Source: Paragordius varius (lineage: Eukaryota > Animalia > Nematomorpha). Taken from it: a stretch of 64,000 bases of DNA. The stretch covers positions 14,260,001-14,324,000 of the forward strand of contig OZ176051.1 in the NCBI GenBank assembly GCA_964247055.1, in the 5' to 3' direction. This document shows, one piece after another, positions 18,384-34,579 of this stretch (positions are counted from its first letter, which is position 1; the number at the start of each line of letters is the position of its first letter). The notes beneath the pieces are model-generated. The model worked only from the letters and a program-made list of their open reading frames with translations, had not been told where the DNA came from and did no database searches. The position numbers were made by a program, and so were the translations under genes.

Positions 18384-20698
18384 CAGTGGTACTCACCAAA
18401 AAAAATTGACGGGCCAAATAAAATATATTTTTTTCGAGGGCCATGAATCTTATAATGGCAAATATTCCATAGCTATTTTACACATATGCACATATTTATA
18501 ATCTAAATCAGCACAATGAATATTTTGCGAATCGCATGTAAATCCAGCTAAAAACTCGTTTTGCACCATCTAATTTAAAAAATATTTTGATATTTTATTT
18601 TCATATTAATTAATAATTTTTGGCTAATTTGGTTTCGCCTCACACAGGCCATTCTTAATACGTCGTCCATATGATCATCGGTTAAGCGATTTCTGTCTGT
18701 ATTCTTGACATACTTCATTTTTGAATATGCCGTCTCACTCGTGTAAGTTGAAGGAAAAACAGTTAGGATAACTTGAGCACATTTATTATATCTTCTTATT
18801 TATTTGGCACATCTTGGCAAAACTCTGCATATCTTTTTTCTCCACGATTCTCCTAGAATATAGCCTCCAAATTGGAATCATTTTTAAAATCTATGGATTC
18901 AATGATATGCGCCTGATCAAAACCGAAGTGCTCAAATCGCTTAATATTGATATATCCATATGCCATGGATTTTCAACGAGTTTTACAATTTTTATTTCTT
19001 AATTCTTGAAATCTGAATTTCATCTTATTAGATAAAAATGTTGAATGATTGTCTATTATTAACCGTGGTAAATTCCATATTTTCTTCATGAATCGTTTTA
19101 ATTGATAAATATAGGAGTGTATTTATAAAATCTTGGTTATATATTATTAATTTTCAAAAGCAAATGTTTGATTAGCAAATTGGGTTATTATTTTGCTCCC
19201 TTGAGAACTTGTATTAAAAATACTAAGTTTATAAGTAATGTCACAAAGGTAGGCTAATAAAACACACCATTCGTCCCTATTTTCCTCGTCAAACTTTCTG
19301 TTATATTTTATAAATAATATAATTTCATGTCTTAAAACAAAAAATCTGTTTAATACGCTGCTTAGGCTTAGCCATCGCACAGCGGTGTACAAACGAATAT
19401 CAAACTGACTGTGGATTGATTTCAGAAGGTTTTTGAATTTACGGCGGTTGAATTTGCCACAGATGTGATTAGCTATATCCACAACAGTTTTAATTACTAA
19501 ATTGAGTGATTCATCTTTTACACGCGAAACCAAGTTTTGCTGATGAATAAAGCAGTGAACGGATAATATTTTAAATACATTTGTTTTTCAAAAGAGCTTT
19601 GTTTATTCCAATCATAGAGGGACAACCATCTGTGCAGATCGAAACCATTTTTTCAGAGATATACCATTATTATTGAAAAAAGTGCTAATTATTTCGAGAA
19701 AATCACTTTTTTTCGTAGTATTATTCATTAGTAAAATTTTTAAATATTCCTCGTACGAAGAGCGCACATTGAAGTGTTGAACTAATATCACTGCTATTTG
19801 CACTTTTTCATAACGAATGTTTTGTTAAAAATATATTTAGACATATCTTCAATGCGTTAAGCACATGTTGAATCAGAAAGTTAAAGTTGTTTTTGCCTCA
19901 TGATTTGATCTTTATTATGGAATTTATCAAATATAAAAGTGCAACCATTTATTAGACAATCTTTTAATATTTGGGAATCAGTAACGGTTTTATATTTTTT
20001 TCTAAAATATAGCAAATTTTATACGAAGCTAATGTTACAGCTTTTTTCTGGGAGAAAGCTATGGACATTAAGATTTTTCTTTCTGGTATAAATACTTACC
20101 CTTTTTTTCGTTTCTTTCCTCATGATTTTCTGAGAATGATGGATTGTAATTCAATATTGTATTTTTTAAAATTATGTTGTCCTTACACACAAGGGAGGTA
20201 GCAACATTTTTATTTAAAACGACAAATCTTCTTATTTCTAAAAGAGCAATTTCCATCGGATAATATACGTTTTTTAGCATTAGATGTCATTCTTTAAATT
20301 TAAGAATATGTTTTGAATTGTGCTATAAAAAAACAGGTTGAAATTTAATGAATGTAAATGAGTTTGGATAGCAATGAAAAGAATATGTATATGCATGTTT
20401 GGATGAAAGGCTTGCTTACAATGGAATGCAATAAAAATTTCAAATAGAAAATAAAATAGAATACAGAAACAGTGTGCCAAAATTTTGAAATCATTTCAAT
20501 GTAGGGAATTTTTTCCAATTTTGGGTAAAAAATAAAAATTACCAAAATTTTATCTAAAAAAATAAATTAATATTAAAATAAGGGAAAATTCGTTTATGTG
20601 TTATTTAAAAAATTTTTGATAAAAAAATAAGTATCAATATGGCCATAGGGCAATTTTTAAGCACTCTTCGCATGCGGCCCGCGGTTTGAGTACCACTG
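18384..20698 (-). mobile_element. Decayed hAT transposon (Buster/SPIN/GTF2IRD2-like transposase remnants)
   Basis: TIR CAGTGGTACTCA / TGAGTACCACTG. Flanks ATTTGAAG / ATTTAAAC. Transposase fragments LYTAVRWLSLSSVLNRFFVLRHEI (19147-19533) and the dimerisation motif FPSTYTSETAYSKMKYVK...RNRLTDDH (about 18670-18760). Confidence 0.9.
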
Positions 20699-21080
20699 AT
20701 TTAAACTAACAGACAACCACAAACTCTCTTGCATCGGATCCGCCCTATTTGCAGATAGTCTTTGAAGGCGGCGCTCGTGTCGACGCTGACGCTAGATGTA
20801 ATGAAATCTTTCCTTTTCCTCTAACAATTCTTACTCACATAAAGTAATTCGACGCCATTTTTATATTAAAACATTTTTGCATAATATCGATGTTTTAAAC
20901 GGTAAATTTAATTTATAAAAATTTTTAATATTTAGGCCTATATGTCATGTGGCCTAAATTTTTGATCTAAGGGTCATCCAAAAAATACTAATATCAGGTA
21001 ATTTTTGATCAATACGTCATAGTCAGTCCGATTGTGTTAAGCTTTAAATAAAGTTTAGCAGCTGTTTAATTTTTTAAGCT

Positions 21081-21934
21081 ATGAGCGAAGGCAGAAAAAT
21101 AGATTTTACAAATTGTAACAAAAATATATGGATTTTAAAAGTATAATTTACTTAAATGCAGGTTCCAAAATACTTATCGGAAACATGGGAAACTCACGAT
21201 CAGGAGATTGGAAAATTAATGATAGACAAAACAAAGTAAACAATATAATTTAAACGAAAGAAAAGAACAAAAAGGTCCTGATATAAATTTTTATTCTTCG
21301 ACAACAAAATCAAATTTACCGCAAATTCACAAAGTATTTATGAATCCTATACCTAATAATACCCTCTTTATTTCATCTCATTACGAAAATGATGAATCCA
21401 ATCCACTTTCCTCCATTTATTTTGTCGAAGGAAAGGCTAGCCAAAAACTTGAGATTCGCCCCCAAACTAACTCTACTGAATACATAAACGTATATTGTAT
21501 TTTACATATATTTGGTTTTATTTATAAATTATCACATTTTTTATTTTTAGCTTAAAAAGGCTCAGTTTGCTATAAAAAACCAGCCAGTTAACACCGTTCA
21601 AAAATTGGATAAACATGTTCAAAATTACAAACCCGTTTCATCACACGCTATGTCTAAGAATTCATTTTTTGGTTCTGAAAGACCCACTCCTAAAGACATT
21701 ACTGTCGGAGCCAAGAAAATGCGATTAGACAAAGAACAAGTAATGGAAATTTTATTTACCGCTTTCGAAAAACACCAATTTTATTCGATCAAGGATTTGG
21801 TTAACATCACTGGACAACCTATAACTTATTTGAAAGAAATTCTGAATGATATATGCGTATATAATTTACGCAATCCGCATAAAAATATGTGGGAACTCAA
21901 ACTTGAATATCGTCATTATAATGCACCATCCTAA
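21081..21934 (+). CDS. GTF2F2: General transcription factor IIF subunit 2 (RAP30), 248 aa, 4 exons
   Basis: Exons 21081-21140, 21162-21235, 21261-21489, 21551-21934 (747 nt). IWILK|VPKYLSETW, NYKPVSSH and LFTAFEKHQFYSIKDLVNITGQPITYLKEILNDIC...HKNMWELKLEY match RAP30. AATAAA near 21968. Confidence 0.95.
21141..21161 (+). other. 21-nt intron (GTF2F2 intron 1)
   Basis: GTATAATTTACTTAAATGCAG. It has an in-frame TAA, and removal restores the conserved W-x-x-K-VPKYL. Confidence 0.9.
21236..21260 (+). other. 25-nt intron (GTF2F2 intron 2)
   Basis: GTAAACAATATAATTTAAACGAAAG. Required for the frame change between exons 2 and 3. Confidence 0.8.
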
Positions 21935-22296
21935 TATGTGTACATATCATTATATAAATCTCTTATAATAAATAAACCTTTATTGGTTAGAGCGTAATTA
22001 ACCAGGGTTTTACCTACGACTTTTTGAGACACTTTGCGCTATCGAAGTTATATGAAAATATGTTCACAAATCATAGTAAAAATTAATATTTTTTAATTTT
22101 CTAACAAAGTTTTTCGGGCAAAAGATTAAATAAATAATAATTATATTGGGTTTTTGAGTCTAAGTGAAAACTAATAAATTATTTTTTAGATTATGTATAT
22201 ATTTTTAAGAGGCCCGCCAGTAAATTGAGTCCAAAATGCTGCGCATTTGTGTTAGACACTTCTGTGTGAAACATTCATAGTTTCATCTGATATGCG

Positions 22297-25200
22297 ATGG
22301 ATTTAGGTGTTTTGAGCACATTTTTACCATTAAATTACGTGACACAAGTAAAAGATGCCGAAAAGTCTATCCAAAAAATTATTAATACAATATTATATCA
22401 CGTAAAACATTTGTGTTTATATTGTTATAGAAAAAATTATTGGATTACCCGCTCTCAGACCACACAATTCGTCACATTTTGAATCTTTTTTCCATGATGG
22501 ACTCTAACAATTTTATAAATACGTGTGGTGTAGGGGAGCGTGAAGGACGAATGTATTCTTCATTAGTGGCCCAACGTCATTTTTAGTAATTAGGAATAAA
22601 ATATAAGGTTAAATATTATGATTTAGCTTATCACATGGTATTGGTAGGTCTGGACAATTAACTGAACTTCAGCCTAAAGCCTTGGGTTCCAGCTGTTTAT
22701 ACCAATTAACTAATTTGTTGGTAAAAGATGCCTTCGTAGTTGCAGGTAATCGATTTTTGCATCTATAACTAGCTTTACTTCCATAATTTATGGTTTTTAA
22801 ATAATTGTTTTTTTGATAATAATCGGAATTCTGAGTAGTTTTACTGCTTTGATGATACTGTATTAATGTTTTAATATAACATTTACAATTCAAATTAATT
22901 CTTGAACAATTTAAATTCACTGTTTTTGGGCTAATATAACTCATCATTGATATGAAATATATTCTTATGGCATAGTTTATTATTTCAGTATTATAAATTT
23001 CATTATTTAAAATTATATAGGTTTTTTTTAGCCTCATAAAAATTTATTTTAGGGGGATTTTGAATTGTTCAAGAGTGAATTTGAATTGTAAATGGTATAA
23101 AAATTAAATCCATTGCGTTTTCTGTTAAAAAATTACTGGGCGGAAGGTGGCAATAATACCTACGGACACCTGTTGTAAAAGACAATAAAAAAAAGGAAAC
23201 TTTATATAATATTTTAGCTTTTTGCCCTCTACAAATTTATTGGTTTTATTCCCTGAGTCCTGTTTTTATTTTGTCGTCGCTCTAATAGTTATTGATTGGT
23301 TAAATTACTTTTGATAATAGTTTAATTTGCCTTAGGACAGTTAATAAATTGACACATCCTACGAATACAAGAAAGCTAATATAGCATTTGTGTATTAATA
23401 CAAAAATTTATAACCGGGGTCCCTACACATCACTCTTGACTCCAAACAACACTGGTAGGAATAGCGTGATTGACTTAACTGAATTTAAGGCAAGTTTATA
23501 TATATATATGAGCAAGAATGAAATAAGATTTATATAAGATAACCTATAATCTGGTTAAAACAACAAGAAAAATAAAAGTAAAAGATTGCATTAAGAACCT
23601 ACAAGAAGTACCTTAACTCGATGTTAATTTTAATTGCCTAAAATTACTGTGATATTTGCAACGTAACTCCTACCATTTAAAAATTATTAAAGCTGGCTGT
23701 TTAGTTTGGAAAACATTTTTGGCCCTAAATTTAACAATCTATAAATACATATATATGACATAGGATTAACCAATGTTAATTCATGCCTCATCGTTCCATT
23801 AGCTACGGGCATGGCACTAACAATGTGTTTTTTAACCCTGAAAAAGAGTCGCCCAAAAGCAAAATATATCATTTTCTCCAGGATCGATCAAAAATCATGC
23901 TTTAAAAGTATCCTAACCGCCGGTAAGATGTATGAAAGTGTTAAATGTATATAATTAAAAATAATGTCATAAGGGCTGTTTTTGTAAATTTTCGCACTTT
24001 TATAAACAATCATATTTCAAAAAATTCATATTTAAATTTTTTCGTAGTGGCTAATTAAAGTCCAAAGAACTATTGTTGATATATACCATTTACAGTTCAA
24101 ATTCACTCTTGAACAATTCAAATACACCCTAAAAATAAATTATATGTGTTCGAACTAATATAACTCATTATTAATATAAAATCTAAGTTTATGGCATAAT
24201 TTATTATTTTTTCAGTATTATTTTAATTTAAAACAAAATTTTAAAAATATATTAAAAAATAGGGAATTTTTAATCTTTAAAAACATGAGGGGGGAATTCG
24301 AATTTTTTAAGGGATGAATTCGAACTGTAAATGGTAAATATTTTGCAGGATTTATCCCTATAATCATTGAGGGCCAATTAACCCACGATGGAACGGATGA
24401 TGAAATGCGTATAAAGCTCGACGACAATATAAAAAATTTCACGGATTTTATTACAAAATTTATTAATGTTAATGCCCAAACATTATCATTACCCATTGAA
24501 TCTGAAGATGATATTTTATGTTTTCTTTCCACCACTTCGTGTTTTGCTCCACGCGGTTCTGACAACATTTCAAACATTGGAATGTTTTGTGCCCACGCCA
24601 ATATTGTCCACATTGTAAATAATGCGTATGGGATGAATTCATTAACACTCATTCGTCAAATTAAGTAAGTAAATTTCAATTCTGTACACTTGTAATTATT
24701 CTTTGTTATCAAAATTTTATTTTATAATATATTCGGTTTATAAAAATTTTTTCGAGCAAAATAATTTATATTTAATATAAATTGTGTGTACGTTGTTGCT
24801 TTAAAGGGTCTTAATGAACGAAATTTCCGATAAGGTCCATTTATATGCAATATCTTTTAATTAAGTATTTTTTTTGAAATTTTTAACACTGTTTCCTCTA
24901 AAAACAAACGTTTTGCCGGCATATTTTGTTGGTTTGGAAAGCTTTTGTACAAATTTTTCGAGTATTAAAATAGATTCATGTATCCTTTATTTTAACAAAA
25001 AATTTATTTTCTTTCTTTAAAGCGGTATAAATATTTGTTAAAAAAATGGAAAAACAAGAGCTCTATATTTAAAATATCATATTCATTAAAAAAGTATCAG
25101 AATTACCAGAGAGCTTTTGTTTTTTCCATTCTTTATTAAATATTTATGCCCATATAACAGGGAAAAAAAATAAATTTTTGATAAAATAAAGGATACATGA

Positions 25201-28200
25201 CTGCACATATAAATAAGAAACAGTTTGTCAGACTTCCCACAAAATACCCATATGCATATTTTCATTTTATTGCGGAAAAATTATTTATACATTGATTGAA
25301 GTTATACTGTTGAAATCACAGTGATGCTTGGCATGTCTAACTAATATAATTAATATTATTTTTTTACTTATATGATAACTAGTAAAGCAGTGTTAAAGGG
25401 TGCCCGCATAGATGCTATGGTACAAAGTTGCGATAAAAATTTTATGGTACCAGTCGGCGGAGCCATTATCAATGATTTTAAGCCCTTGAAGAAAGCCAAC
25501 AAGGGTAAAAATAGAATATTTTAAGCAAAAATAAAATAATTTTGTACGAACTTTTTGTTTCCCAGGTAATATGGATAAGAATGGAGGAAATAACTCGAAA
25601 ACTTGTAGTACAACAAACCAAAATAAACGAAATTTCATCGAAGAAGTGGCGCATGTATACCCAGGTATATCTATTAATATTTTGTCTATCATTTTTCTCA
25701 ATGGAAAAAACCAACTATTAAACTCTTAAAAACATTAAAAAAGATTTCAAAATTCATGTAGTGAGCGAAAAATAATTTTATTATTGTCTCACATTTAACT
25801 TTAAAGGGAGGGCCTCAATAACACCATCCCTTGACATTTTTATCACCTTATTATCGATGGGTTCACAACGATATAAACAATTACTGATATCTCAGCTTGA
25901 AAACTTTGCCTATTTCAAGTCTGAACTGGAAAAAGTTGCACAAACATACAATGAACGAATCCTAAACACCCCAAATAATCCTATATCAATCGGTTACTCT
26001 TTAAACTTTTTTTATCAATTTGATATGAGGTTGCTTAGATAATAATTTTTTGCCTTAACAGTATTTTTTTGTGAATTACTATGAATGCAATATAAAATAA
26101 AATAGGATTCATAAGTACATATATTTTAATGACTTTTATGTATTTAATCATTTTCATAGTTTTTACCTCCAATATTTTAGTTATTCATTATTTTTATTCT
26201 ATTTATATGTGTTTTAATTATATCTTGTAAAAAAATTTTACGATTTTTTAGAATTATAGAATATAATAAATATTATTGTATAAACGCCCCTTTAAAACAA
26301 AACAGTAATATTGATTTATGACATTTGGTTTGGGCGCAAAATCAAAATATTTTCTAAAATCCAGCGTGTATTCGTTTCAATGTAATGTGTATTATGATAT
26401 CCCCTTTTCACAAAATGTTACTAAACCATAATGAAAAATACTATGTAAGCCTATGAACAAAACTAAATTTTATCACAAAAGTTAGCATATATATATATTT
26501 AGGTTTTTTTTCTTGCAATCTGGCTTGCTTTTTTGCTAACATTTTTTGTGATATGCGCGTGGTATTGGCAATCTAATTGCGATTACTATTATTATAGATA
26601 TGGGACATGAGACTATTTCTTTTAAATGCTACTAAAATCAGACTTTAAATCAGGCGTGCCCAACATATGGACATTAACAAATATTTCATAAACTACTACT
26701 ATTTATAACATCCTAAATTTGGAAAATTTAAAATTTACATTTGTTTGTTAAACAAAATCAATTCTACTTGAATTTTGTAAAAATTTGTAATTAAAATTTC
26801 TCTTGAGCTGCAGAAATACTTTGGAGGGCCGCGTGTTGAGCACCCCCTGCTTTAAATAGCCGACTTGTTTAATGCATATATTTAATCCTAATCGCAGCCG
26901 TACAAAATAAGTAGTTTATAAAAAAGGTTTCCAAACTGTGTTAAAAAATTAGAAGTTTGAAATTATACTCAACGATTAAAATTCTTACAAAAAAAAATCC
27001 GTAATATCTATTTTCTAAAGATTTTTACATTATGTCAATTTTTAGGTTTCGTTTGTTAGCTTTAGGACACACAATTAGAACAGATAAATGCAGAATGCGA
27101 AATTTTGTGATTAAAAACCAAATGCACCAAAGAATTAATTATTAATAATTTTATGTCATCTTTTTTGGTTAAAGCTGCTGGTATATAAAATATTTTTCGA
27201 AAAAAAACTTTGTGATTTTACCAATATTTATATACAAAGAATATAGCCGCTATTAACCTAAATTAATTTATATTTTTTAGCCAAAGATTTGAATTTTTTT
27301 ACTACTTTAACACTACACTATTGAAGCAATGGGTATAATATAGCAAAAAATGTGGTATAGCATTTATTGTTTGATAAAAACTCAGATGCTATTTAAAACA
27401 TCCTTTTGTGAAGCATCGTTTTTACAAAAAAATGCAAACAAATTCCTCCAAATTTTATTCATTTGGCTTTAATTTTTGCATTTTGAAACCACTTCTAAAA
27501 TATCAAGGCTATATAATAGATGTTCTTTTAAGTATTTATCCAAGTCTATCAAACATTAAACTTTTTTCCAAAATCTTTCATAAAACATATTTTTTATACT
27601 AAATATATGTACTTCATACATAAATATTATTATATACATTTTTCATGCAAAAACCTCATTTTTCCAAATGCAACATTTTTTCAACCAAACGCATCATTTT
27701 GTTACTAATCACTACCGTTTTCTCATTTAAGCTAGGCTAGAGCTAGCAAGAGGGCTAGGTTCATAAATATGACTCGAACTATCTAAATTGGTTGGTGGTT
27801 GGTTTTTCCTAAGTCGTAAACGACTTTTTGGATATAGTTTTAACTATTTCTTTCCATTTTTTTCTATCTTTAACCGCTATATTGAGCTCTTTCAGTGTCA
27901 TTTTGGTCTCTTCTTTTATCATATCCAACCACCTCATCGGTGGTCGGCCTCGTTTCCTTTGCCCTTCTACCTTCCCAAACATTGTATCTTTCTCCAGAGA
28001 ATTCGATCGCATGACATGACCAAAATATGTTAACTTTCTTTTTAGAATTATCTCCATGATGTTTGTTTTAGGTTTTATTTCTGTAGTTAGACTTTCATTC
28101 TTAATTTTATCCTTCCAGGTGTATCCTAGCATCCTACGCCAGCAGCTCCTTTCAAAAGCCATGAGCCTTTCTTTGTCCCTTTTTCTGAGAGTCCAACTCT

Positions 28201-31200
28201 CACCTCCATATGTGATGACCGGGAGAACGAAACAGTAGAGTAATCTTTTTTTGGTTTCAACTCCTACGCTTTTGTTTTTCCAAATCTTTATTAATTTGGT
28301 CATCGCTTCTCTACCCAATCCTATTCTCTTTCTGATGTCAGGAGTTGAAGACCCATCCTCTGAAATTATTGCGCCCAAAAACGTTAACTGTTTAACTATT
28401 TCTATTTCTACTCCTTCTATTATAATTGTAGGCTTTTTTCCTGTACATAATATTTTGGTTTTGTTAGGATTAAGCCTAAGACCATACCTCAAACTTTCCT
28501 TTCGAATCTCTTCAATCAATTCCTTCAAATCATTTGCACTTTCAGCTATAAGAGTGGTATCGTCTGCAAACCTTAAATTATTGATTGTTCTCCCTCCTAT
28601 TCTTACTCCAATATTTTTACCATCCAACTTCCTCATTATCATTTCTGTGCACATATTGAACAGATAAGGGGATAAGCAACACCCTTGTCTGACTCCTTTC
28701 AAGATTGGTATTTCGTCTGTGTCCCCCGCTGGTGTTCTAATAATCGCTCTTTGTTTTACATACAGAGAGCATCTTATTAAGTGAGACGATACCCCTACTA
28801 ACTTTAATGTTTCCCACAAGGAGTCATAGTTAATTGAATCGAATGCTTGTCTGTAATCAATAAAACACATGTATAATTCTTTCTGGAACTCTTTTGATGT
28901 TTCCATTATCCTTCTCATGTTTGAGATATGGTCTCTTGTGCTTTTTCCCTTCATAAATCCGGCTTGATTTTCTGGTATTTCTGTCTGTATGATACTGTGC
29001 ATTCTGTTTTGTATTACTTTTAGTAAGACCTTACTAGCGTGGCTAATAAGAGATATGTTCCGATAATTCTCGCATTGGAGTACATCTCCTTTTTTATATA
29101 TTGGGAGATATACAGATGATGCCCAATCGTTTGGCCACTCACATGTTTCCCACACCTTTTGACATAACTGGTGTAACTTTTCAACGGGAATAGCTTTTAT
29201 GAACTCTATTGGGATATTGTCTAATCCCATCGCTTTGTTGTTAGATTTGTTTTAAGGCTAATTCAACCTCCTCTCTTAATATATCTGGATCACGTTCTTC
29301 TTCTTTTAATTGCAACACCTTTGTTTGAGGAGCCTGATAGAGTTTTTGGGTGTATTCCTTCCATCTTTCTCGTACATCTGTTTGTTTGCACAATATGGTG
29401 CCATTCTCTTTTTTAATCTTTTGTGATGATATAAAAGGTTTATGAGTCATTTGCTTCAGTTTCTGGAACATTGGTTGCATTAATCCTTTTTTGTTATTTA
29501 ATTCCACTTCCAAACATTGTTTATTAAGAAAATCTTCATAATCCTTCCTTGTTTGTCGTTGAAATTCTCTGTTATATAATTTTACCATTTTATTATCACC
29601 TCTTGATTTAGCTTTTCTCCCCTTTTCTGCTATCTCTATACTCTTTTCTGATATCCATTTGTTATCTTTCCTCTTTACTCTCTGCACTTTTTCTTTTGCC
29701 ACTTCATTAACAACATTTTTTATCGTTCCCCATAATTGTTCTGAGCTATATCCATTGTCCAATCTTCCTAATCTATCTTTGGTTTCTGTTCTAAAACTAT
29801 TTGGAATGTTCCGAGTGTCATATCTGTATATCTGTTTAACCTTATTTTTAATTATTTTAAGTTTGATTTTGGTTATTAAAAGCTCATGATCGCTAGAGCA
29901 ATCGCTGCTTTTGCTTGTTTTGGTATCGATTATAGAGCTTTTCCATTTTTGAGGACACATTATGTAATCAATTTGATTCTTATATTTACCACATGGAGAG
30001 GTCCATGTGTATAACCTCCTATTGTGTTGTGGAAACCATGTGTTGGTTATCATCATCTCATTTTCTTGACAAAAATTGATCAGTGCTTCCCCGGCCTCGT
30101 TTCGTTCTCCCAATCCATATGGCCCGACTATTTGATCTACTCTACCTCTACCAACTTTGCTGTTCCAATCCCCTCCTATGATAATCATATCTCCTTTCTT
30201 CGTTTCATCCAAAACTATTTGCAACGTTGCATAAAAGTCCTCTATGTCTTCTTTGGGAGCGTTTGACGTAGGAGCATAGACTACTATGTATGTAAATTTA
30301 GGTGGCTTGGCATTCAGCCTAATACTCATGATTCTGGGTGTATATGGTGTATAACTAATGAGACTTTTATTTAATTTGTTTTTTATTAATACTGCAACGC
30401 CTTCAGATTTCTGGTCATCTCTCCCCGATCTTAACAATGTATAATTTTCGTTTTGTACTTTCGCGCTACCTTTTTGCTTGGTTTCCGTTAGACCCAGTAT
30501 ATCTATGTTCAATCTTTCCATTTTCTTTTCAATTATCACCTGTTTGGTTGATGTTAAGGAACGTACATTCCAGCATCCAACTTTGAAAATTCTTGTTAAG
30601 TTCATTTAGTAAAACTATTTTTTGGCAGTAATAAACGAGGGTGGTTTGCCATTGCCTTCCCTCTCACTTACCCTCTTTACAAAAAATAAATATCTAGAAT
30701 AATTAAAATTAAAGAGTAATCTTTATAAATGTTGTTAATTTGGATAAATTATAAATATTGATATTTTGCTCTGTCTGGCAATCATAAAGGAAAAATATAA
30801 AGAAATTATGGCTAGGCTAGTAAAAATAAAATAATTAGGCACCAAGGAGTAGAGAAAAAAAAAAGAGAGAGATCTGTATAACAATGATTTTTGATGACTT
30901 AAGAATTATGTTACTCTTTAAATTACATACTTAGCATACAAATAAAATAAAAACTCTACAAAACAAAGAAAAAGATTAATAATTACTAAAAGGAAACCTA
31001 TTTTTTAAATATATTTATAGTATATAATAAAATAATACTATCCTTGAATATCCTCCCGCTTTCAATCACATAGTTTCATGCATGAAAAAAAAATCTACTA
31101 TCTAAATTATCTATACCATTGCTGATATCTCAACAGTTTTTTCTTTCTCGTGTGAGCTGGCAACTAAGGACACATTGGTCGAAATGGCTTTTAAAAAATC

Positions 31201-32331: not shown

Positions 32332-34579
32332 TTACAATGTATGCCAAAACAGTGATATTGCCTTAATCATCCCCACATCAGTGTAATTAATGTAATAAAG
32401 TAGGCCCAGAGTAGTTATAGAAACCGCACTAACACCCATTTTAGTTAACGGGCCCAGGAAATTCCAGCGGTTATAACGGTCCCATCGTTCAACATAATCA
32501 CTCATTACAGTTTCCATTCCCCTACAAATTATTGATGATATATATTGGTTTTTTAACACTAAAAAACGTTAAAAATATTATACAAATTATTTTAATTGTT
32601 AAAAAATACGAGAAAATCAGTTTAAAATACTATATACTATATATAAACATTTTTTAATTCCGTTGTTGTAACTCTTTAGTAGAAAGAATTTTTTTTCATA
32701 TTTTACTATACGAACCAAATTCCAAAATTAACATTATTATTAATCAAGTAAATAACTCAAAATTAAAACACATTTGTGAGTAAAGGCATTTGTTTTAAAC
32801 CAGGGATGTCCAACACAAATGGCTTGAAGATCCACATTTTCGACCTGAAAAATCGGAAGACCCACATTTGAATTAATATCATTTGCACTTCAAGAGTGTC
32901 CTTGAACACTTCAAGTTGGTCCTTAAAATTTTTATTTAACCATTATTTATGCATGTATTTTTTATTTTATTATTTTTTGACCTAATTTTCTTAATTTATA
33001 TTATATATTTTATCATTTAAAAATAAAAAAATTTATTCAAAAACCACTTTTTTATTAAAAACTAATTTTTTTCCAATTAAAAAATTATTTAATTTAAATG
33101 TATTTAATGAAAAATTGTAAATAATACCTAGAAAACTTATAAATTTTTAATTAGGTGTTAAATTCTCATAAATATCTAATATTAATTACAGAAATTAAAA
33201 AATATTTTCTCAATGATTAAAAGTTTACATTGATTTAAAATGTTAAATAATTAAAAATAGGTCAAAAACGATACAATAGATAAATGATTTACGATTTGAT
33301 TGATAAAAGTAAAAAACATAACAAAAACGTCAAAGGATTAACTTAAACTGTTCAAGAAACTTGAAATGTTTAAGGACCAACTTGATGTTTTCAAGGACAC
33401 TCTTGAAGTGTAAATGTTATATATCTGCTATTGATGAAAACACAAATATAGAATATATCACAATGAATTCTATTCAAGAAATTAATGAATTTATCCACCA
33501 CTAAATTCCTGAACTTGTTTGTATCAAATTTTAAATATTTTAAGAATATATTAGAAATATATATATGGGCTACCGAGGAATCTTTTATAAATGTAAAATA
33601 AAATTTCACCTCTCAATTAAGATCAATATGAACATATTTGTTTTACAATGACACTTAGAAATGTAGTTAATATCATCAGTTTTAAAGCATAAACATTAAT
33701 AATCTATTGAAGATATTGATACCAAATTTGAGATATTATTATACTGCGGTTTACACAAATATGGCTCTTTTAATAAATTAAAAACATTTACCAATTCAGA
33801 ATTTTTTCGAATACGTAATATATAACTTCAATAATATAGGTATAACTATATTAAAAATGAGTATGATTTTCAGATATATGGCTCTCTCACTAAATAATTA
33901 CCATAAAAGGTTTTCCAATGGCAAGTATTATAAAGATTTTCAGATTGTAAAGGAAATGATAAAATAAATGTCATAAAAATATTAATAACATCGAATTTTA
34001 TGAAAATCAAATTAAAATCTTTTTATAGAAAATTAACACTCAAAAATAAAACTTTTTGCCAGAAATTTTTTTTTAAATATTTTTAAAAATATACTCAAAA
34101 TTTCGGAACCACTTGTTGGACGCCCCTGTTTTAAACCCTAATCATTAGCGGCATAAAATTAAAATACGTTAAAAGATTATATATATTTTTCATTTAAGTA
34201 TTTCCATTCTATATTTTTAAAATTATTTAGGAGATAATTTAAGTGTTAAACTGAAAGATTTAAATTACCAATGTGAATGCAATATTAATGTGGTAGCTAA
34301 CAAATAATCCATAAATGGTGCTTGATAAAAATAGGCTAAAGGATACATAGAAGCAAGTCCAACCGTAACAATCCTTTCAATCGTCCAATGTAATGCCGTA
34401 TGATCTTTTTCCTCGCCTTTAATTTTCAATACAGTTGGAATGGCATCTATAATAAAAAAATAAAATTAACTTGCCACTGTAGATTGAAAACGTGGAAATT
34501 GTGATAGTTTAAAATAGTTTTGTTGATAAATAAAGTTAGGATAGTTTTTATTTGCAACAACCCGAAAAATTAGAGACAT
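32332..34579 (-). CDS. SDHD: Succinate dehydrogenase cytochrome b small subunit (CybS), 158 aa, 3 exons
   Basis: Exons 34579-34471, 34446-34269, 32521-32332 (477 nt). Presequence-like N-terminus, ALHWTIERIV, MDYLLATTLILHSHW|GMETVMSDY and LYYINYTDVGMIKAISLFW match SDHD. Confidence 0.92.
32801..34128. mobile_element. hAT non-autonomous element in SDHD intron 2, carrying a nested MITE at 32877-33421
   Basis: TIR CAGGGATGTCCAAC / GTTGGACGCCCCTG. Perfect TSD TTTTAAAC. The nested MITE has TCATTTGCACTTCA ends and about 21-bp subterminal repeats; a second copy is at 52568-53140. Confidence 0.85.
34447..34470 (-). other. 24-nt intron (SDHD intron 1)
   Basis: GTTAATTTTATTTTTTTATTATAG. It has an in-frame TAA and phase 1 on both sides. 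A weaker upstream donor (GTTTTC) would give a longer intron. Confidence 0.7.

What the first reader, a model, noticed from the sequence alone, without database searches (positions are those of the whole stretch)
21141..21161. A 21-nt intron splitting the conserved WILK|VPKYL motif of TFIIF-beta
Seen: GTATAATTTACTTAAATGCAG at phase 0, with an in-frame TAA, exactly between residues that are adjacent in RAP30 orthologues (human WLVKVPKYL). It is the cleanest test case because an essential gene leaves no alternative model. From memory, and needing a check, human GTF2F2, SEPSECS and SDHD have introns at this and several other positions seen here. That would make these shrunken ancestral introns, not new insertions.
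Basis: partly seen in the sequence, partly recalled or inferred. Interest (0 to 1): 0.75.

Follow-up and report, generated by a model that had tools for sequence, protein, structure and literature searches.

The report
21-base intron in hairworm TFIIF-beta
A single-copy essential transcription-factor gene of a horsehair-worm relative is split by a 21-base GT-AG segment exactly where seven other animals have an ordinary intron, so it is almost certainly a real, shrunken ancestral intron, below the 30-base limit long assumed for animals; no RNA was available to show it being cut out.

Summary
Window 21141-21161 is GTATAATTTACTTAAATGCAG, with GT-AG ends, at phase 0, with two in-frame TAA codons. 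It lies between ...NIWILK and VPKYL... of the only TFIIF-beta (RAP30) gene in the 110.6-Mb genome.

I mapped annotated orthologues onto their own DNA. A phase-0 intron sits at exactly WLVK|VPKY in a limpet, a brachiopod, a lancelet, a sea spider, a tubeworm and a pufferfish (277-13,813 nt). The hairworm Gordionus, the closest relative found, has one of 42 nt. A psyllid has lost it. The next intron here (25 nt, phase 2) is also at an ancestral site and is 39 nt in Gordionus.

A second individual's DNA has at least 4 changes in the 21 nt. Of the 13 listed exon changes, 10 are synonymous and two more fall in a single codon. So the gene is under selection in the spliced frame and the 21 nt is not coding.

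The 21-mer is unique in the genome, and U2 snRNA is canonical.

Direct RNA proof is missing: all runs laid were DNA.

Human DNA, SEPSECS and SDHD intron positions were not tested.

Introns under 30 bp are published only for Myxobolidae and Dicyemida. Earlier notes of this scan report the same intron class in many other windows of this genome.

The parts
21081..21140 (+). TFIIF-beta exon 1 (20 codons, MSEGRKIDFTNCNKNIWILK). An in-frame TAA lies one codon upstream of the ATG.
   Evidence: It aligns end to end with orthologue N-termini, with D8, W17 and K20 invariant. 14 of 17 residues are identical to Gordionus. The one listed change in the second individual is synonymous.
21141..21161 (+). Intron 1: 21 nt, GT-AG, phase 0, two in-frame TAA. 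An A-run (AAA) lies 5-7 nt before the 3' end inside CTTAAAT.
   Evidence: The same site and phase are occupied by introns of 277-13,813 nt in six animals and 42 nt in Gordionus. At least 4 of 21 positions differ in run X5, against 13 of 599 in exons. The 21-mer is unique in the genome.
21162..21235 (+). Exon 2 (VPKYLSETWETHDQEIGKLMIDKT plus 2 nt of a Lys codon).
   Evidence: Pfam TFIIF_beta_N, E=0.004, profile positions 9-37. It aligns to human TFIIF-beta residues 23-48. 12 of 25 positions are identical to Gordionus.
21236..21260 (+). Intron 2: 25 nt, GT-AG, phase 2 (GTAAAC...TTTAAACGAAAG). It shifts the frame if kept.
   Evidence: The same site and phase (after GKLxIxxx plus 2 nt) are occupied in all six outgroup animals and in Gordionus, where the intron is 39 nt. 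The only other AG nearby gives a stop (read).
21261..21489 (+). Exon 3 (76 full codons, KEQKGPDINF...TEYIN).
   Evidence: The listed changes in X5 are four synonymous and one I>V.
21490..21550 (+). Intron 3: 61 nt, GT-AG, phase 0 (N|LKK). It lies 8 nt upstream of the bilaterian phase-2 site, but at the same place as a 1425-nt intron of Gordionus.
   Evidence: X5 has deletions of 1 and 3 nt here.
21551..21937 (+). Exon 4 with the TFIIF_beta winged-helix domain and the TAA stop. Two overlapping AATAAA follow at 21967-21976.
   Evidence: Pfam PF02270, E=1.1e-21. It is the only match in the whole genome. It is 61% identical to Gordionus. Four listed X5 changes are all synonymous at third positions.

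Best explanation
Window 21141-21161 is a genuine U2-type GT-AG spliceosomal intron of only 21 nt in the single-copy TFIIF-beta (RAP30) gene of a gordiid-like horsehair worm (Nematomorpha). It is the lineage-specific, shrunken remnant of an intron that was already at this codon boundary in the bilaterian ancestor. Its size is hundreds to thousands of nt in other phyla, 42 nt in Gordionus and 21 nt here.

Inferred, not shown: the canonical spliceosome removes it, using a minimal GTA 5' site, an A-rich branch region (CTTAAAT, A's about 13-15 nt from the 5' end and 5-7 nt from the AG) and the terminal AG. This joins ...NIWILK to VPKYL..., the first beta-strand region of the TFIIF dimerisation domain.

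The gene kept its two 5'-most ancestral introns as mini-introns (21 and 25 nt), kept a third of 61 nt, and lost the ancestral introns further 3'. This pattern is what reverse-transcript-mediated, 3'-biased intron loss combined with a deletion bias would give.
For: Shown:
1. The sequence, its phase and its stops.
2. Exons 1 and 2 abut residues that are adjacent in all orthologues.
3. Exact maps of annotated proteins on their own genomic loci put a phase-0 intron at WLVK|VPKY in Lottia (588 nt), Lingula (478), Branchiostoma (681), Nymphon (13,813), Lamellibrachia (2046) and Takifugu (277), and at WLVK|IPKY in Gordionus (42). The window's 25-nt intron matches a phase-2 intron in all seven.
4. PF02270 hits only this gene in 110.6 Mb. 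PF17683 finds no uninterrupted N-terminal copy.
5. In run X5, another sample under the same species label, at least 4 of 21 intron positions differ against 13 of 599 exon positions (Fisher p=0.0017; 0.008 if all unlisted changes are put in exons). Ten of the 13 exon changes are synonymous and two more fall in one codon (D>G). Intron 3 carries 1- and 3-nt deletions.
6. The 21-mer occurs once in the genome.
7. U2 snRNA is present in many copies with the canonical GUAGUA box.
8. The closest protein in 1.8 billion representatives is Gordionus TFIIF-beta, which places the genome in or near Nematomorpha.
9. Other mini-introns at gene 5' ends in this window: SEPSECS 29 and 41 nt, SDHD 24 nt.
Against: No RNA evidence was obtained. 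The four runs laid were three DNA data sets that contain the 21 nt and one presumed RNA set that does not cover the gene. No own-species transcript-derived protein turned up in the protein searches. The branch point is only inferred. A distance of about 13 nt from the 5' splice site to the branch point is far shorter than the spliceosome structures solved for yeast and human accommodate (established knowledge). In the X5 allele the listed changes remove both in-frame stops, so retaining the segment there would add 7 residues instead of truncating the protein. One unlisted 1-nt gap lies somewhere in 21050-21429 of the X5 contig, so the intron length in X5 is not certain.
Confidence: 0.92

Rival explanations
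1. The copy is a pseudogene or the 21 nt stays in the mRNA, so translation stops at the first TAA after 21 codons.
For: Two in-frame TAA codons. No RNA shows removal.
Against: It is the only TFIIF_beta domain in the genome of an animal that needs TFIIF. All four exon frames are open. Ten of the 13 listed differences from a second individual are synonymous. The breaks coincide with ancestral intron sites and have GT-AG ends.
Confidence: 0.03
2. Translation starts at the ATG at 21156-21158 inside the segment (MQVPKYL...), and 'exon 1' is an untranslated leader or uORF, so no 21-nt intron is needed.
For: That ATG is in frame with exon 2.
Against: Exon 1 encodes the conserved N-terminus: D8, W17 and K20 are invariant across nine sequences, and 14 of 17 residues are identical to Gordionus. 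The X5 allele changes this ATG to ATT (21158 G>T). The 25-nt frame-shifting intron 75 nt downstream would still require mini-intron splicing.
Confidence: 0.02
3. The 21 nt is coding, with TAA read as a sense codon or read through, giving a 7-residue insert.
For: The length is a multiple of 3. The X5 allele has no stop in it.
Against: No exon has an in-frame stop, and the gene ends on TAA where the orthologues end. The neighbouring 25-nt and 61-nt segments shift the frame, so they must be removed anyway. The segment evolves about nine times faster than the exons. It would split a strand conserved in all orthologues.
Confidence: 0.01
4. The segment is removed at the DNA level (a ciliate-like internal eliminated sequence), or it is a recent mobile 'introner' insertion.
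For: Its size resembles ciliate IESs.
Against: DNA contigs of runs X1 and X5 carry it, and no joint at 21140/21162 is among those listed for any DNA run (275 further joints were not shown). The ends are GT..AG, not TA..TA. The 21-mer is unique in 110.6 Mb. The site is ancestral.
Confidence: 0.01

Closest known systems
Ultra-short spliceosomal introns of myxobolid Myxozoa and Dicyema japonicum (PMC13644364; PMC6736024)
   Same: Introns under 30 nt, here 21 and 25. The 5' site is reduced to GTA. There is no polypyrimidine tract. Two to three A residues lie just upstream of the AG. The introns sit at conserved ancestral positions. U2 snRNA is canonical. The animal is a parasite.
   Different: The lineage is different: an ecdysozoan close to Gordionus. 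It is not reported in the 51-genome survey text, which contains no nematomorph term. In this window the tiny introns are the first one or two introns of a gene and coexist with introns of 61 nt to more than 1 kb that hold transposons. In myxobolids and Dicyema, by contrast, short introns dominate the genome (median 22-27 bp in myxobolids, mean 38 bp in Dicyema).
Orthologous intron 1 of TFIIF-beta (GTF2F2/RAP30) in other animals
   Same: Identical codon boundary (WLVK|VPKY) and phase 0 in Lottia, Lingula, Branchiostoma, Nymphon, Lamellibrachia, Takifugu and Gordionus.
   Different: The length is 21 nt against 42 nt in Gordionus and 277-13,813 nt in the others. The intron is absent in the psyllid Diaphorina.
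Tiny introns of ciliates (Paramecium about 25 nt, Stentor 15-16 nt; PMC9505925, bioRxiv 10.1101/2021.08.05.455221)
   Same: The size range is similar and the ends are GT-AG. In the reference allele an in-frame stop would flag a retained intron.
   Different: In ciliates essentially all introns are tiny. Here only the 5'-proximal ones are. The host is a bilaterian animal with a standard genetic code.

Membership tests
U2-type GT-AG spliceosomal intron | GT at the 5' end and AG at the 3' end | tested here: met
   The listed X5 changes leave both dinucleotides intact.
U2-type GT-AG spliceosomal intron | Removal restores a continuous, conserved reading frame | tested here: met
   Tested exon by exon. 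Exon 1 ends on the K of WLVK. Exon 2 starts on the V of VPKYL. The joined model was not sent to any tool.
U2-type GT-AG spliceosomal intron | Homologous intron at the same position and phase in orthologues | tested here: met
   Seven species from six phyla plus Nematomorpha.
U2-type GT-AG spliceosomal intron | Branch-point adenosine able to pair with the U2 GUAGUA box | tested here: inconclusive
   U2 is canonical. The intron has TACTTAA (5 of 7 to UACUAAC), X5 has TTCTAAA, and Gordionus has CTAAAT before its AG. No lariat data exist.
U2-type GT-AG spliceosomal intron | Absent from mature mRNA | not testable with these tools
   The single read-laying run returned only DNA contigs. The presumed RNA run X6 does not cover the gene.
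Animal ultra-short (<30 nt) intron class | Length under 30 nt with a reduced GTa 5' site and an A-run before the AG | tested here: met
   21 nt (GTATAA...AAATGCAG) and 25 nt (GTAAAC...AAACGAAAG). The criteria come from PMC13644364.
Animal ultra-short (<30 nt) intron class | A recurrent class in the genome, not a single case | tested here: inconclusive
   Three introns under 30 nt occur in this window: TFIIF-beta 21 and 25, SDHD 24. SEPSECS adds 29 and 41. Genome-wide counts rest on earlier unchecked scan notes.
TFIIF beta subunit (RAP30/GTF2F2) | C-terminal winged-helix domain PF02270 above the cut-off | tested here: met
   77.1 bits against a cut-off of 23; 78.2 bits in the genome search.
TFIIF beta subunit (RAP30/GTF2F2) | N-terminal dimerisation domain PF17683 | tested here: inconclusive
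   Exon 2 alone scores 18.1 bits (cut-off 25, E=0.004) because the domain is split over three exons. Pairwise alignments to Gordionus and arthropods cover it.
Processed or decayed pseudogene | Neutral substitution pattern, frame-breaking lesions, and a functional copy elsewhere | tested here: not met
   Ten of 13 exon differences are synonymous. There is no other copy. The breaks are only at intron sites.

The most novel reading that the evidence does not exclude
Gordiid hairworms have a distinct class of 21-30-nt introns, restricted to the first introns of genes, that coexists with ordinary and kb-long, transposon-filled introns. This would mean that a canonical U2 spliceosome can work with about 13 nt between the 5' site and the branch point when the intron is cap-proximal, perhaps helped by the cap-binding complex or by promoter-proximal co-transcriptional assembly. 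The halving from about 40 nt (Gordionus) to about 21-25 nt would have happened within Nematomorpha. That would be a third, independent and mechanistically different origin of sub-30-nt introns in animals.
Probability: 0.35. Interest if true: 0.8.

Novelty: new member of a known kind. Interest (0 to 1): 0.6.

Why it matters
The most recent survey I could read states that introns under 30 bp exist in only two animal lineages, both with compact genomes (PMC13644364). The case here comes from a third lineage, an ecdysozoan. It is anchored in an essential single-copy gene and dated by a relative: 42 nt in Gordionus, 21 nt here.

It gives a clean substrate for asking how short an animal intron can be and where its branch point lies.

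It also matters in practice. Standard gene finders set minimum intron lengths above 21-25 nt. They would truncate or split genes like this one, which may add to apparent gene losses and low BUSCO scores in Nematomorpha (71.6% reported for Gordionus). That last link is my inference.

Tried and rejected
1. RNA evidence. The look-up of sequencing runs listed no holder on record as RNA. Read laying on 20700-26400 with X1, X3, X5 and X6 gave DNA contigs only, and X6 gave one 35-nt partial match elsewhere.

2. Own-species or transcript-derived proteins. The word search with exon 4 and the exhaustive search found nothing above 61% identity.

3. Priapulus and Tachypleus loci. The exact look-ups failed. 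Gordionus isoform X2 also failed, but isoform X1 worked.

4. My first junction mapper, built on tblastn HSPs, missed many junctions. I replaced it with an exact walker.

5. blastp-short with exon 1 gave spurious matches to the C-terminal KNMWELK. I replaced it with a MAFFT alignment of N-termini.

6. A phylogenetic signal from exon 4 alone. Arthropods, Priapulus, a bivalve and an annelid all score 54-58%, so this was uninformative until the Gordionus hit.

7. An ab initio scan for ORF-bridging mini-introns. I did not run it. At 27% GC, stop-free flanks of 20-25 codons are too common, and I expected hundreds of false positives.

8. The literature held in the library has no paper on hairworm intron lengths.

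9. The myxozoan and dicyemid origins of the genome were rejected. The genome is 110.6 Mb at about 27-28% GC, and its closest TFIIF-beta is Gordionus. Dicyema is 67.5 Mb at 36.7% GC and Henneguya is 74.9 Mb.

Full report
**Observation.** One search shows GTATAATTTACTTAAATGCAG at 21141-21161. Translating from the ATG at 21081 gives MSEGRKIDFTNCNKNIWILK, then V*FT*MQ, then VPKYLSETWETHDQEIGKLMIDKT. The segment is therefore 21 nt, at phase 0, bounded by GT and AG, with two in-frame TAA codons. An in-frame TAA lies one codon upstream of the ATG.

**Gene model.**
- Reading on, a second segment at 21236-21260 (25 nt, GT-AG, phase 2) must be removed to reach KEQKGPDINF...TEYIN.
- A third segment at 21490-21550 (61 nt, GT-AG, phase 0) leads into the last exon, 21551-21937.
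- The last exon carries the TFIIF_beta winged-helix domain (PF02270, E=1.1e-21).
- Exon 2 alone gives TFIIF_beta_N at E=0.004.
- Exon 2 aligns from its first residue to V23-T48 of human TFIIF-beta chains such as 1f3u_A and 5iy6.
- Two overlapping AATAAA follow the stop at 21967-21976.

**Is it the working copy?**
- A six-frame search of the whole assembly (110,561,105 bases, 44 contigs; the window is C2:14260001-14324000) with PF02270 finds exactly one match, this gene.
- PF17683 finds no uninterrupted N-terminal domain anywhere.
- The 21-mer occurs once in the genome. The only other hit has 2 mismatches. So it is not a repeated mobile insert.

**Which organism?**
- Earlier scan notes called the genome a probable horsehair worm. 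I tested this.
- The exhaustive search of 1.84 billion representatives with exon 4 puts P0225 first among full-length single-stretch hits (160.9 bits, 61% identity). P0224, an oribatid-mite protein with a duplicated C-terminal region, scores higher overall on two stretches.
- The listing of cluster members names P0225 XP_065325179.1, TFIIF subunit 2-like of Gordionus sp. m RMFG-2023.
- The N-termini nearly coincide: GRKIDFTNCNKNIWILK here against GRKIDFSNCNKNIWLVK, 14 of 17 identical.
- The window therefore comes from a nematomorph that is related to Gordionus but clearly distinct from it.
- The GC content (about 27-28%) matches the 26.93% reported for Gordionus.
The Gordionus affinity excludes both groups.

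**Is the intron ancestral?**
I fetched the genomic loci of annotated orthologues. I mapped each protein exactly onto its own DNA with a script that walks codon by codon and allows only GT/GC-AG jumps.

A phase-0 intron lies exactly between WLVK and VPKY in:

| Species | Locus | Intron length (nt) |
|---|---|---|
| Lottia | L004 | 588 |
| Lingula | L005 | 478 |
| Branchiostoma | L006 | 681 |
| Nymphon | L007 | 13,813 |
| Lamellibrachia | L008 | 2046 |
| Takifugu | L009 | 277 |
| Gordionus (WLVK\|IPKY) | L012 | 42 |

- The psyllid Diaphorina lacks this intron.
- All seven species also have a phase-2 intron after GKLxIxxx plus 2 nt. This is precisely where the window's 25-nt intron sits. It is 39 nt in Gordionus.
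- The window's 61-nt intron (N|LKK, phase 0) lies 8 nt upstream of the bilaterian phase-2 site (YMKLK|R). It coincides with a 1425-nt intron of Gordionus (KDYMN|LKKQ). The shift is therefore shared by both hairworms.
- The remaining ancestral introns are absent here: two at phase 1, and two at phase 0 at NHxxN| and QPI|TYLKEIL. Gordionus keeps one phase-1 intron (45 nt) plus another 45-nt intron.
- So this gene kept only its 5'-most ancestral introns, and those two are the tiny ones.

**Evidence from a second individual.**
- Read laying returned no RNA. X1, X3 and X5 are genomic contigs, and X6 does not cover the gene.
- X5, another sample under the same species label, differs from the window at many sites.
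- Within the 21 nt it differs at four listed positions: 21145 A>C, 21150 A>T, 21153 T>A and 21158 G>T. GT and AG are intact.
- Across 599 exon nt there are 13 listed changes. Ten are synonymous (nine at third positions, one at a first position). Two more fall in one codon (D>G). One gives I>V.
- Intron 1 against exons gives Fisher p=0.0017, or 0.008 if all eight unlisted substitutions are assigned to exons.
- Intron 3 carries 1- and 3-nt deletions.
- This is the signature of a selected coding sequence interrupted by unconstrained spacers. It argues against a pseudogene.
- Two details matter. The change 21158 G>T destroys the in-frame ATG at 21156, which removes the 'downstream start' model. 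The listed X5 changes also remove both TAA codons, so in that allele a retained intron would add seven residues rather than truncate.
- Caveat: one unlisted 1-nt gap lies somewhere in 21050-21429 of the X5 contig, so the intron length in X5 is not certain.

**Mechanism (inferred).**
- U2 snRNA is present in 46 matches, the best at 177.7 bits, with the canonical GUGUAGUAUCUGUUCUUAUCAG region. Conventional U2-dependent splicing is therefore expected.
- The 5' sites are minimal: AAA|GTATAA and AAA|GTAAAC.
- Neither intron has a polypyrimidine tract.
- Both mini-introns carry TTAAAYG four to five nt before the AG. Intron 1 has TACTTAA (5 of 7 to UACUAAC), X5 has TTCTAAA, and the Gordionus intron ends ...CTAAATAG.
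- That places the likely branch A's 13-15 nt from the 5' end and 5-7 nt from the 3' end.
- The same features are described for myxobolids and Dicyema: a 5' site reduced to 'GTa' and 2-3 A residues upstream of the AG (PMC13644364).
- I could not test branch-point use.

**Context in the window.**
- SEPSECS (ATG at 22297, + strand) begins with introns of 29 nt (22402-22430, phase 0) and 41 nt (22586-22626, phase 2). Introns of roughly 250 nt to 1 kb follow, and some hold high-copy repeats.
- SDHD (- strand) has a 24-nt phase-1 first intron at 34470-34447, followed by an intron of about 1.7 kb.
- In all three genes the tiny introns are the first ones. This agrees with earlier notes of the scan on other windows. 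Those notes are unchecked leads. The same class has therefore been reported by this scan before, on other DNA of this genome.

**Comparison with what is known.**
- The most recent survey (PMC13644364, September 2026) states that introns under 30 bp are known among animals only in Myxobolidae and Dicyema. Its text contains no nematomorph term.
- The Gordionus genome preprint does not contain the word 'intron'.
- Searches for hairworm, Nematomorpha or Acutogordius together with 'intron' found nothing relevant.
- Within the literature I could search, this is an unreported third animal lineage.
- It differs from the two known lineages in that the tiny introns coexist with long ones and sit at gene starts.

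**Verdict.** The 'shrunken ancestral intron' reading is supported at about 0.92. What is missing is RNA. The kind of feature, an ultra-short spliceosomal intron, is known. The lineage and the exceptionally clean comparative anchoring are new. Not done: the human GTF2F2 gene map (by rule), SEPSECS and SDHD intron homology, and any search or fold of the joined protein model.

Noticed in passing
window 22402-22430 and 22586-22626 (+): SEPSECS (ATG at 22297) starts with GT-AG introns of 29 nt (phase 0) and 41 nt (phase 2). Its later introns run from roughly 250 nt to 1 kb, and some contain high-copy repeats.
   Followed up: partly
window 34470-34447 (-): SDHD (CybS, ATG at 34579 on the - strand) has a 24-nt phase-1 first intron, GTTAAT...TTATAG, unusual in having GTT at its 5' site. 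The next intron is about 1.7 kb.
   Followed up: partly
window 21490-21550; L012 8470-9894: The third TFIIF-beta intron sits at N|LKK (phase 0) in both this genome (61 nt) and Gordionus (1425 nt). This is 8 nt upstream of the phase-2 site shared by six other phyla, so it looks like an intron slide, or a loss plus gain, in the hairworm stem lineage.
   Followed up: partly
window 27809-30605 (-): Two adjacent long open frames, 454 aa (endonuclease-like N-terminal part) and 473 aa (reverse-transcriptase-like). They look like an apparently intact non-LTR retrotransposon. I ran no family search on them.
   Followed up: no
window 20700-20890, 22801-23182, 23947-24328, 24902-25283: Summed contig depths of 10^4-10^6 in runs X1 and X5, against about 300-500 for the flanks. 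Many contigs join 22920-23099 to 24079-24221. These are high-copy repeats, and two related copies sit in and around the long SEPSECS intron.
   Followed up: no
window 21050-21786 (run X5 against the assembly): Sample S3 carries the same species label as S1, the probable source of the assembly. It differs by about 4% over the gene, and run X3 shares several of its variants. This means either very high polymorphism or two cryptic lineages under one name.
   Followed up: no
window 19147-19533 (-): A 128-aa open frame (…YTAVRWLSLSSVLNRF…) that looks, by eye only, like the C-terminal dimerisation region of a hAT-type transposase.
   Followed up: no
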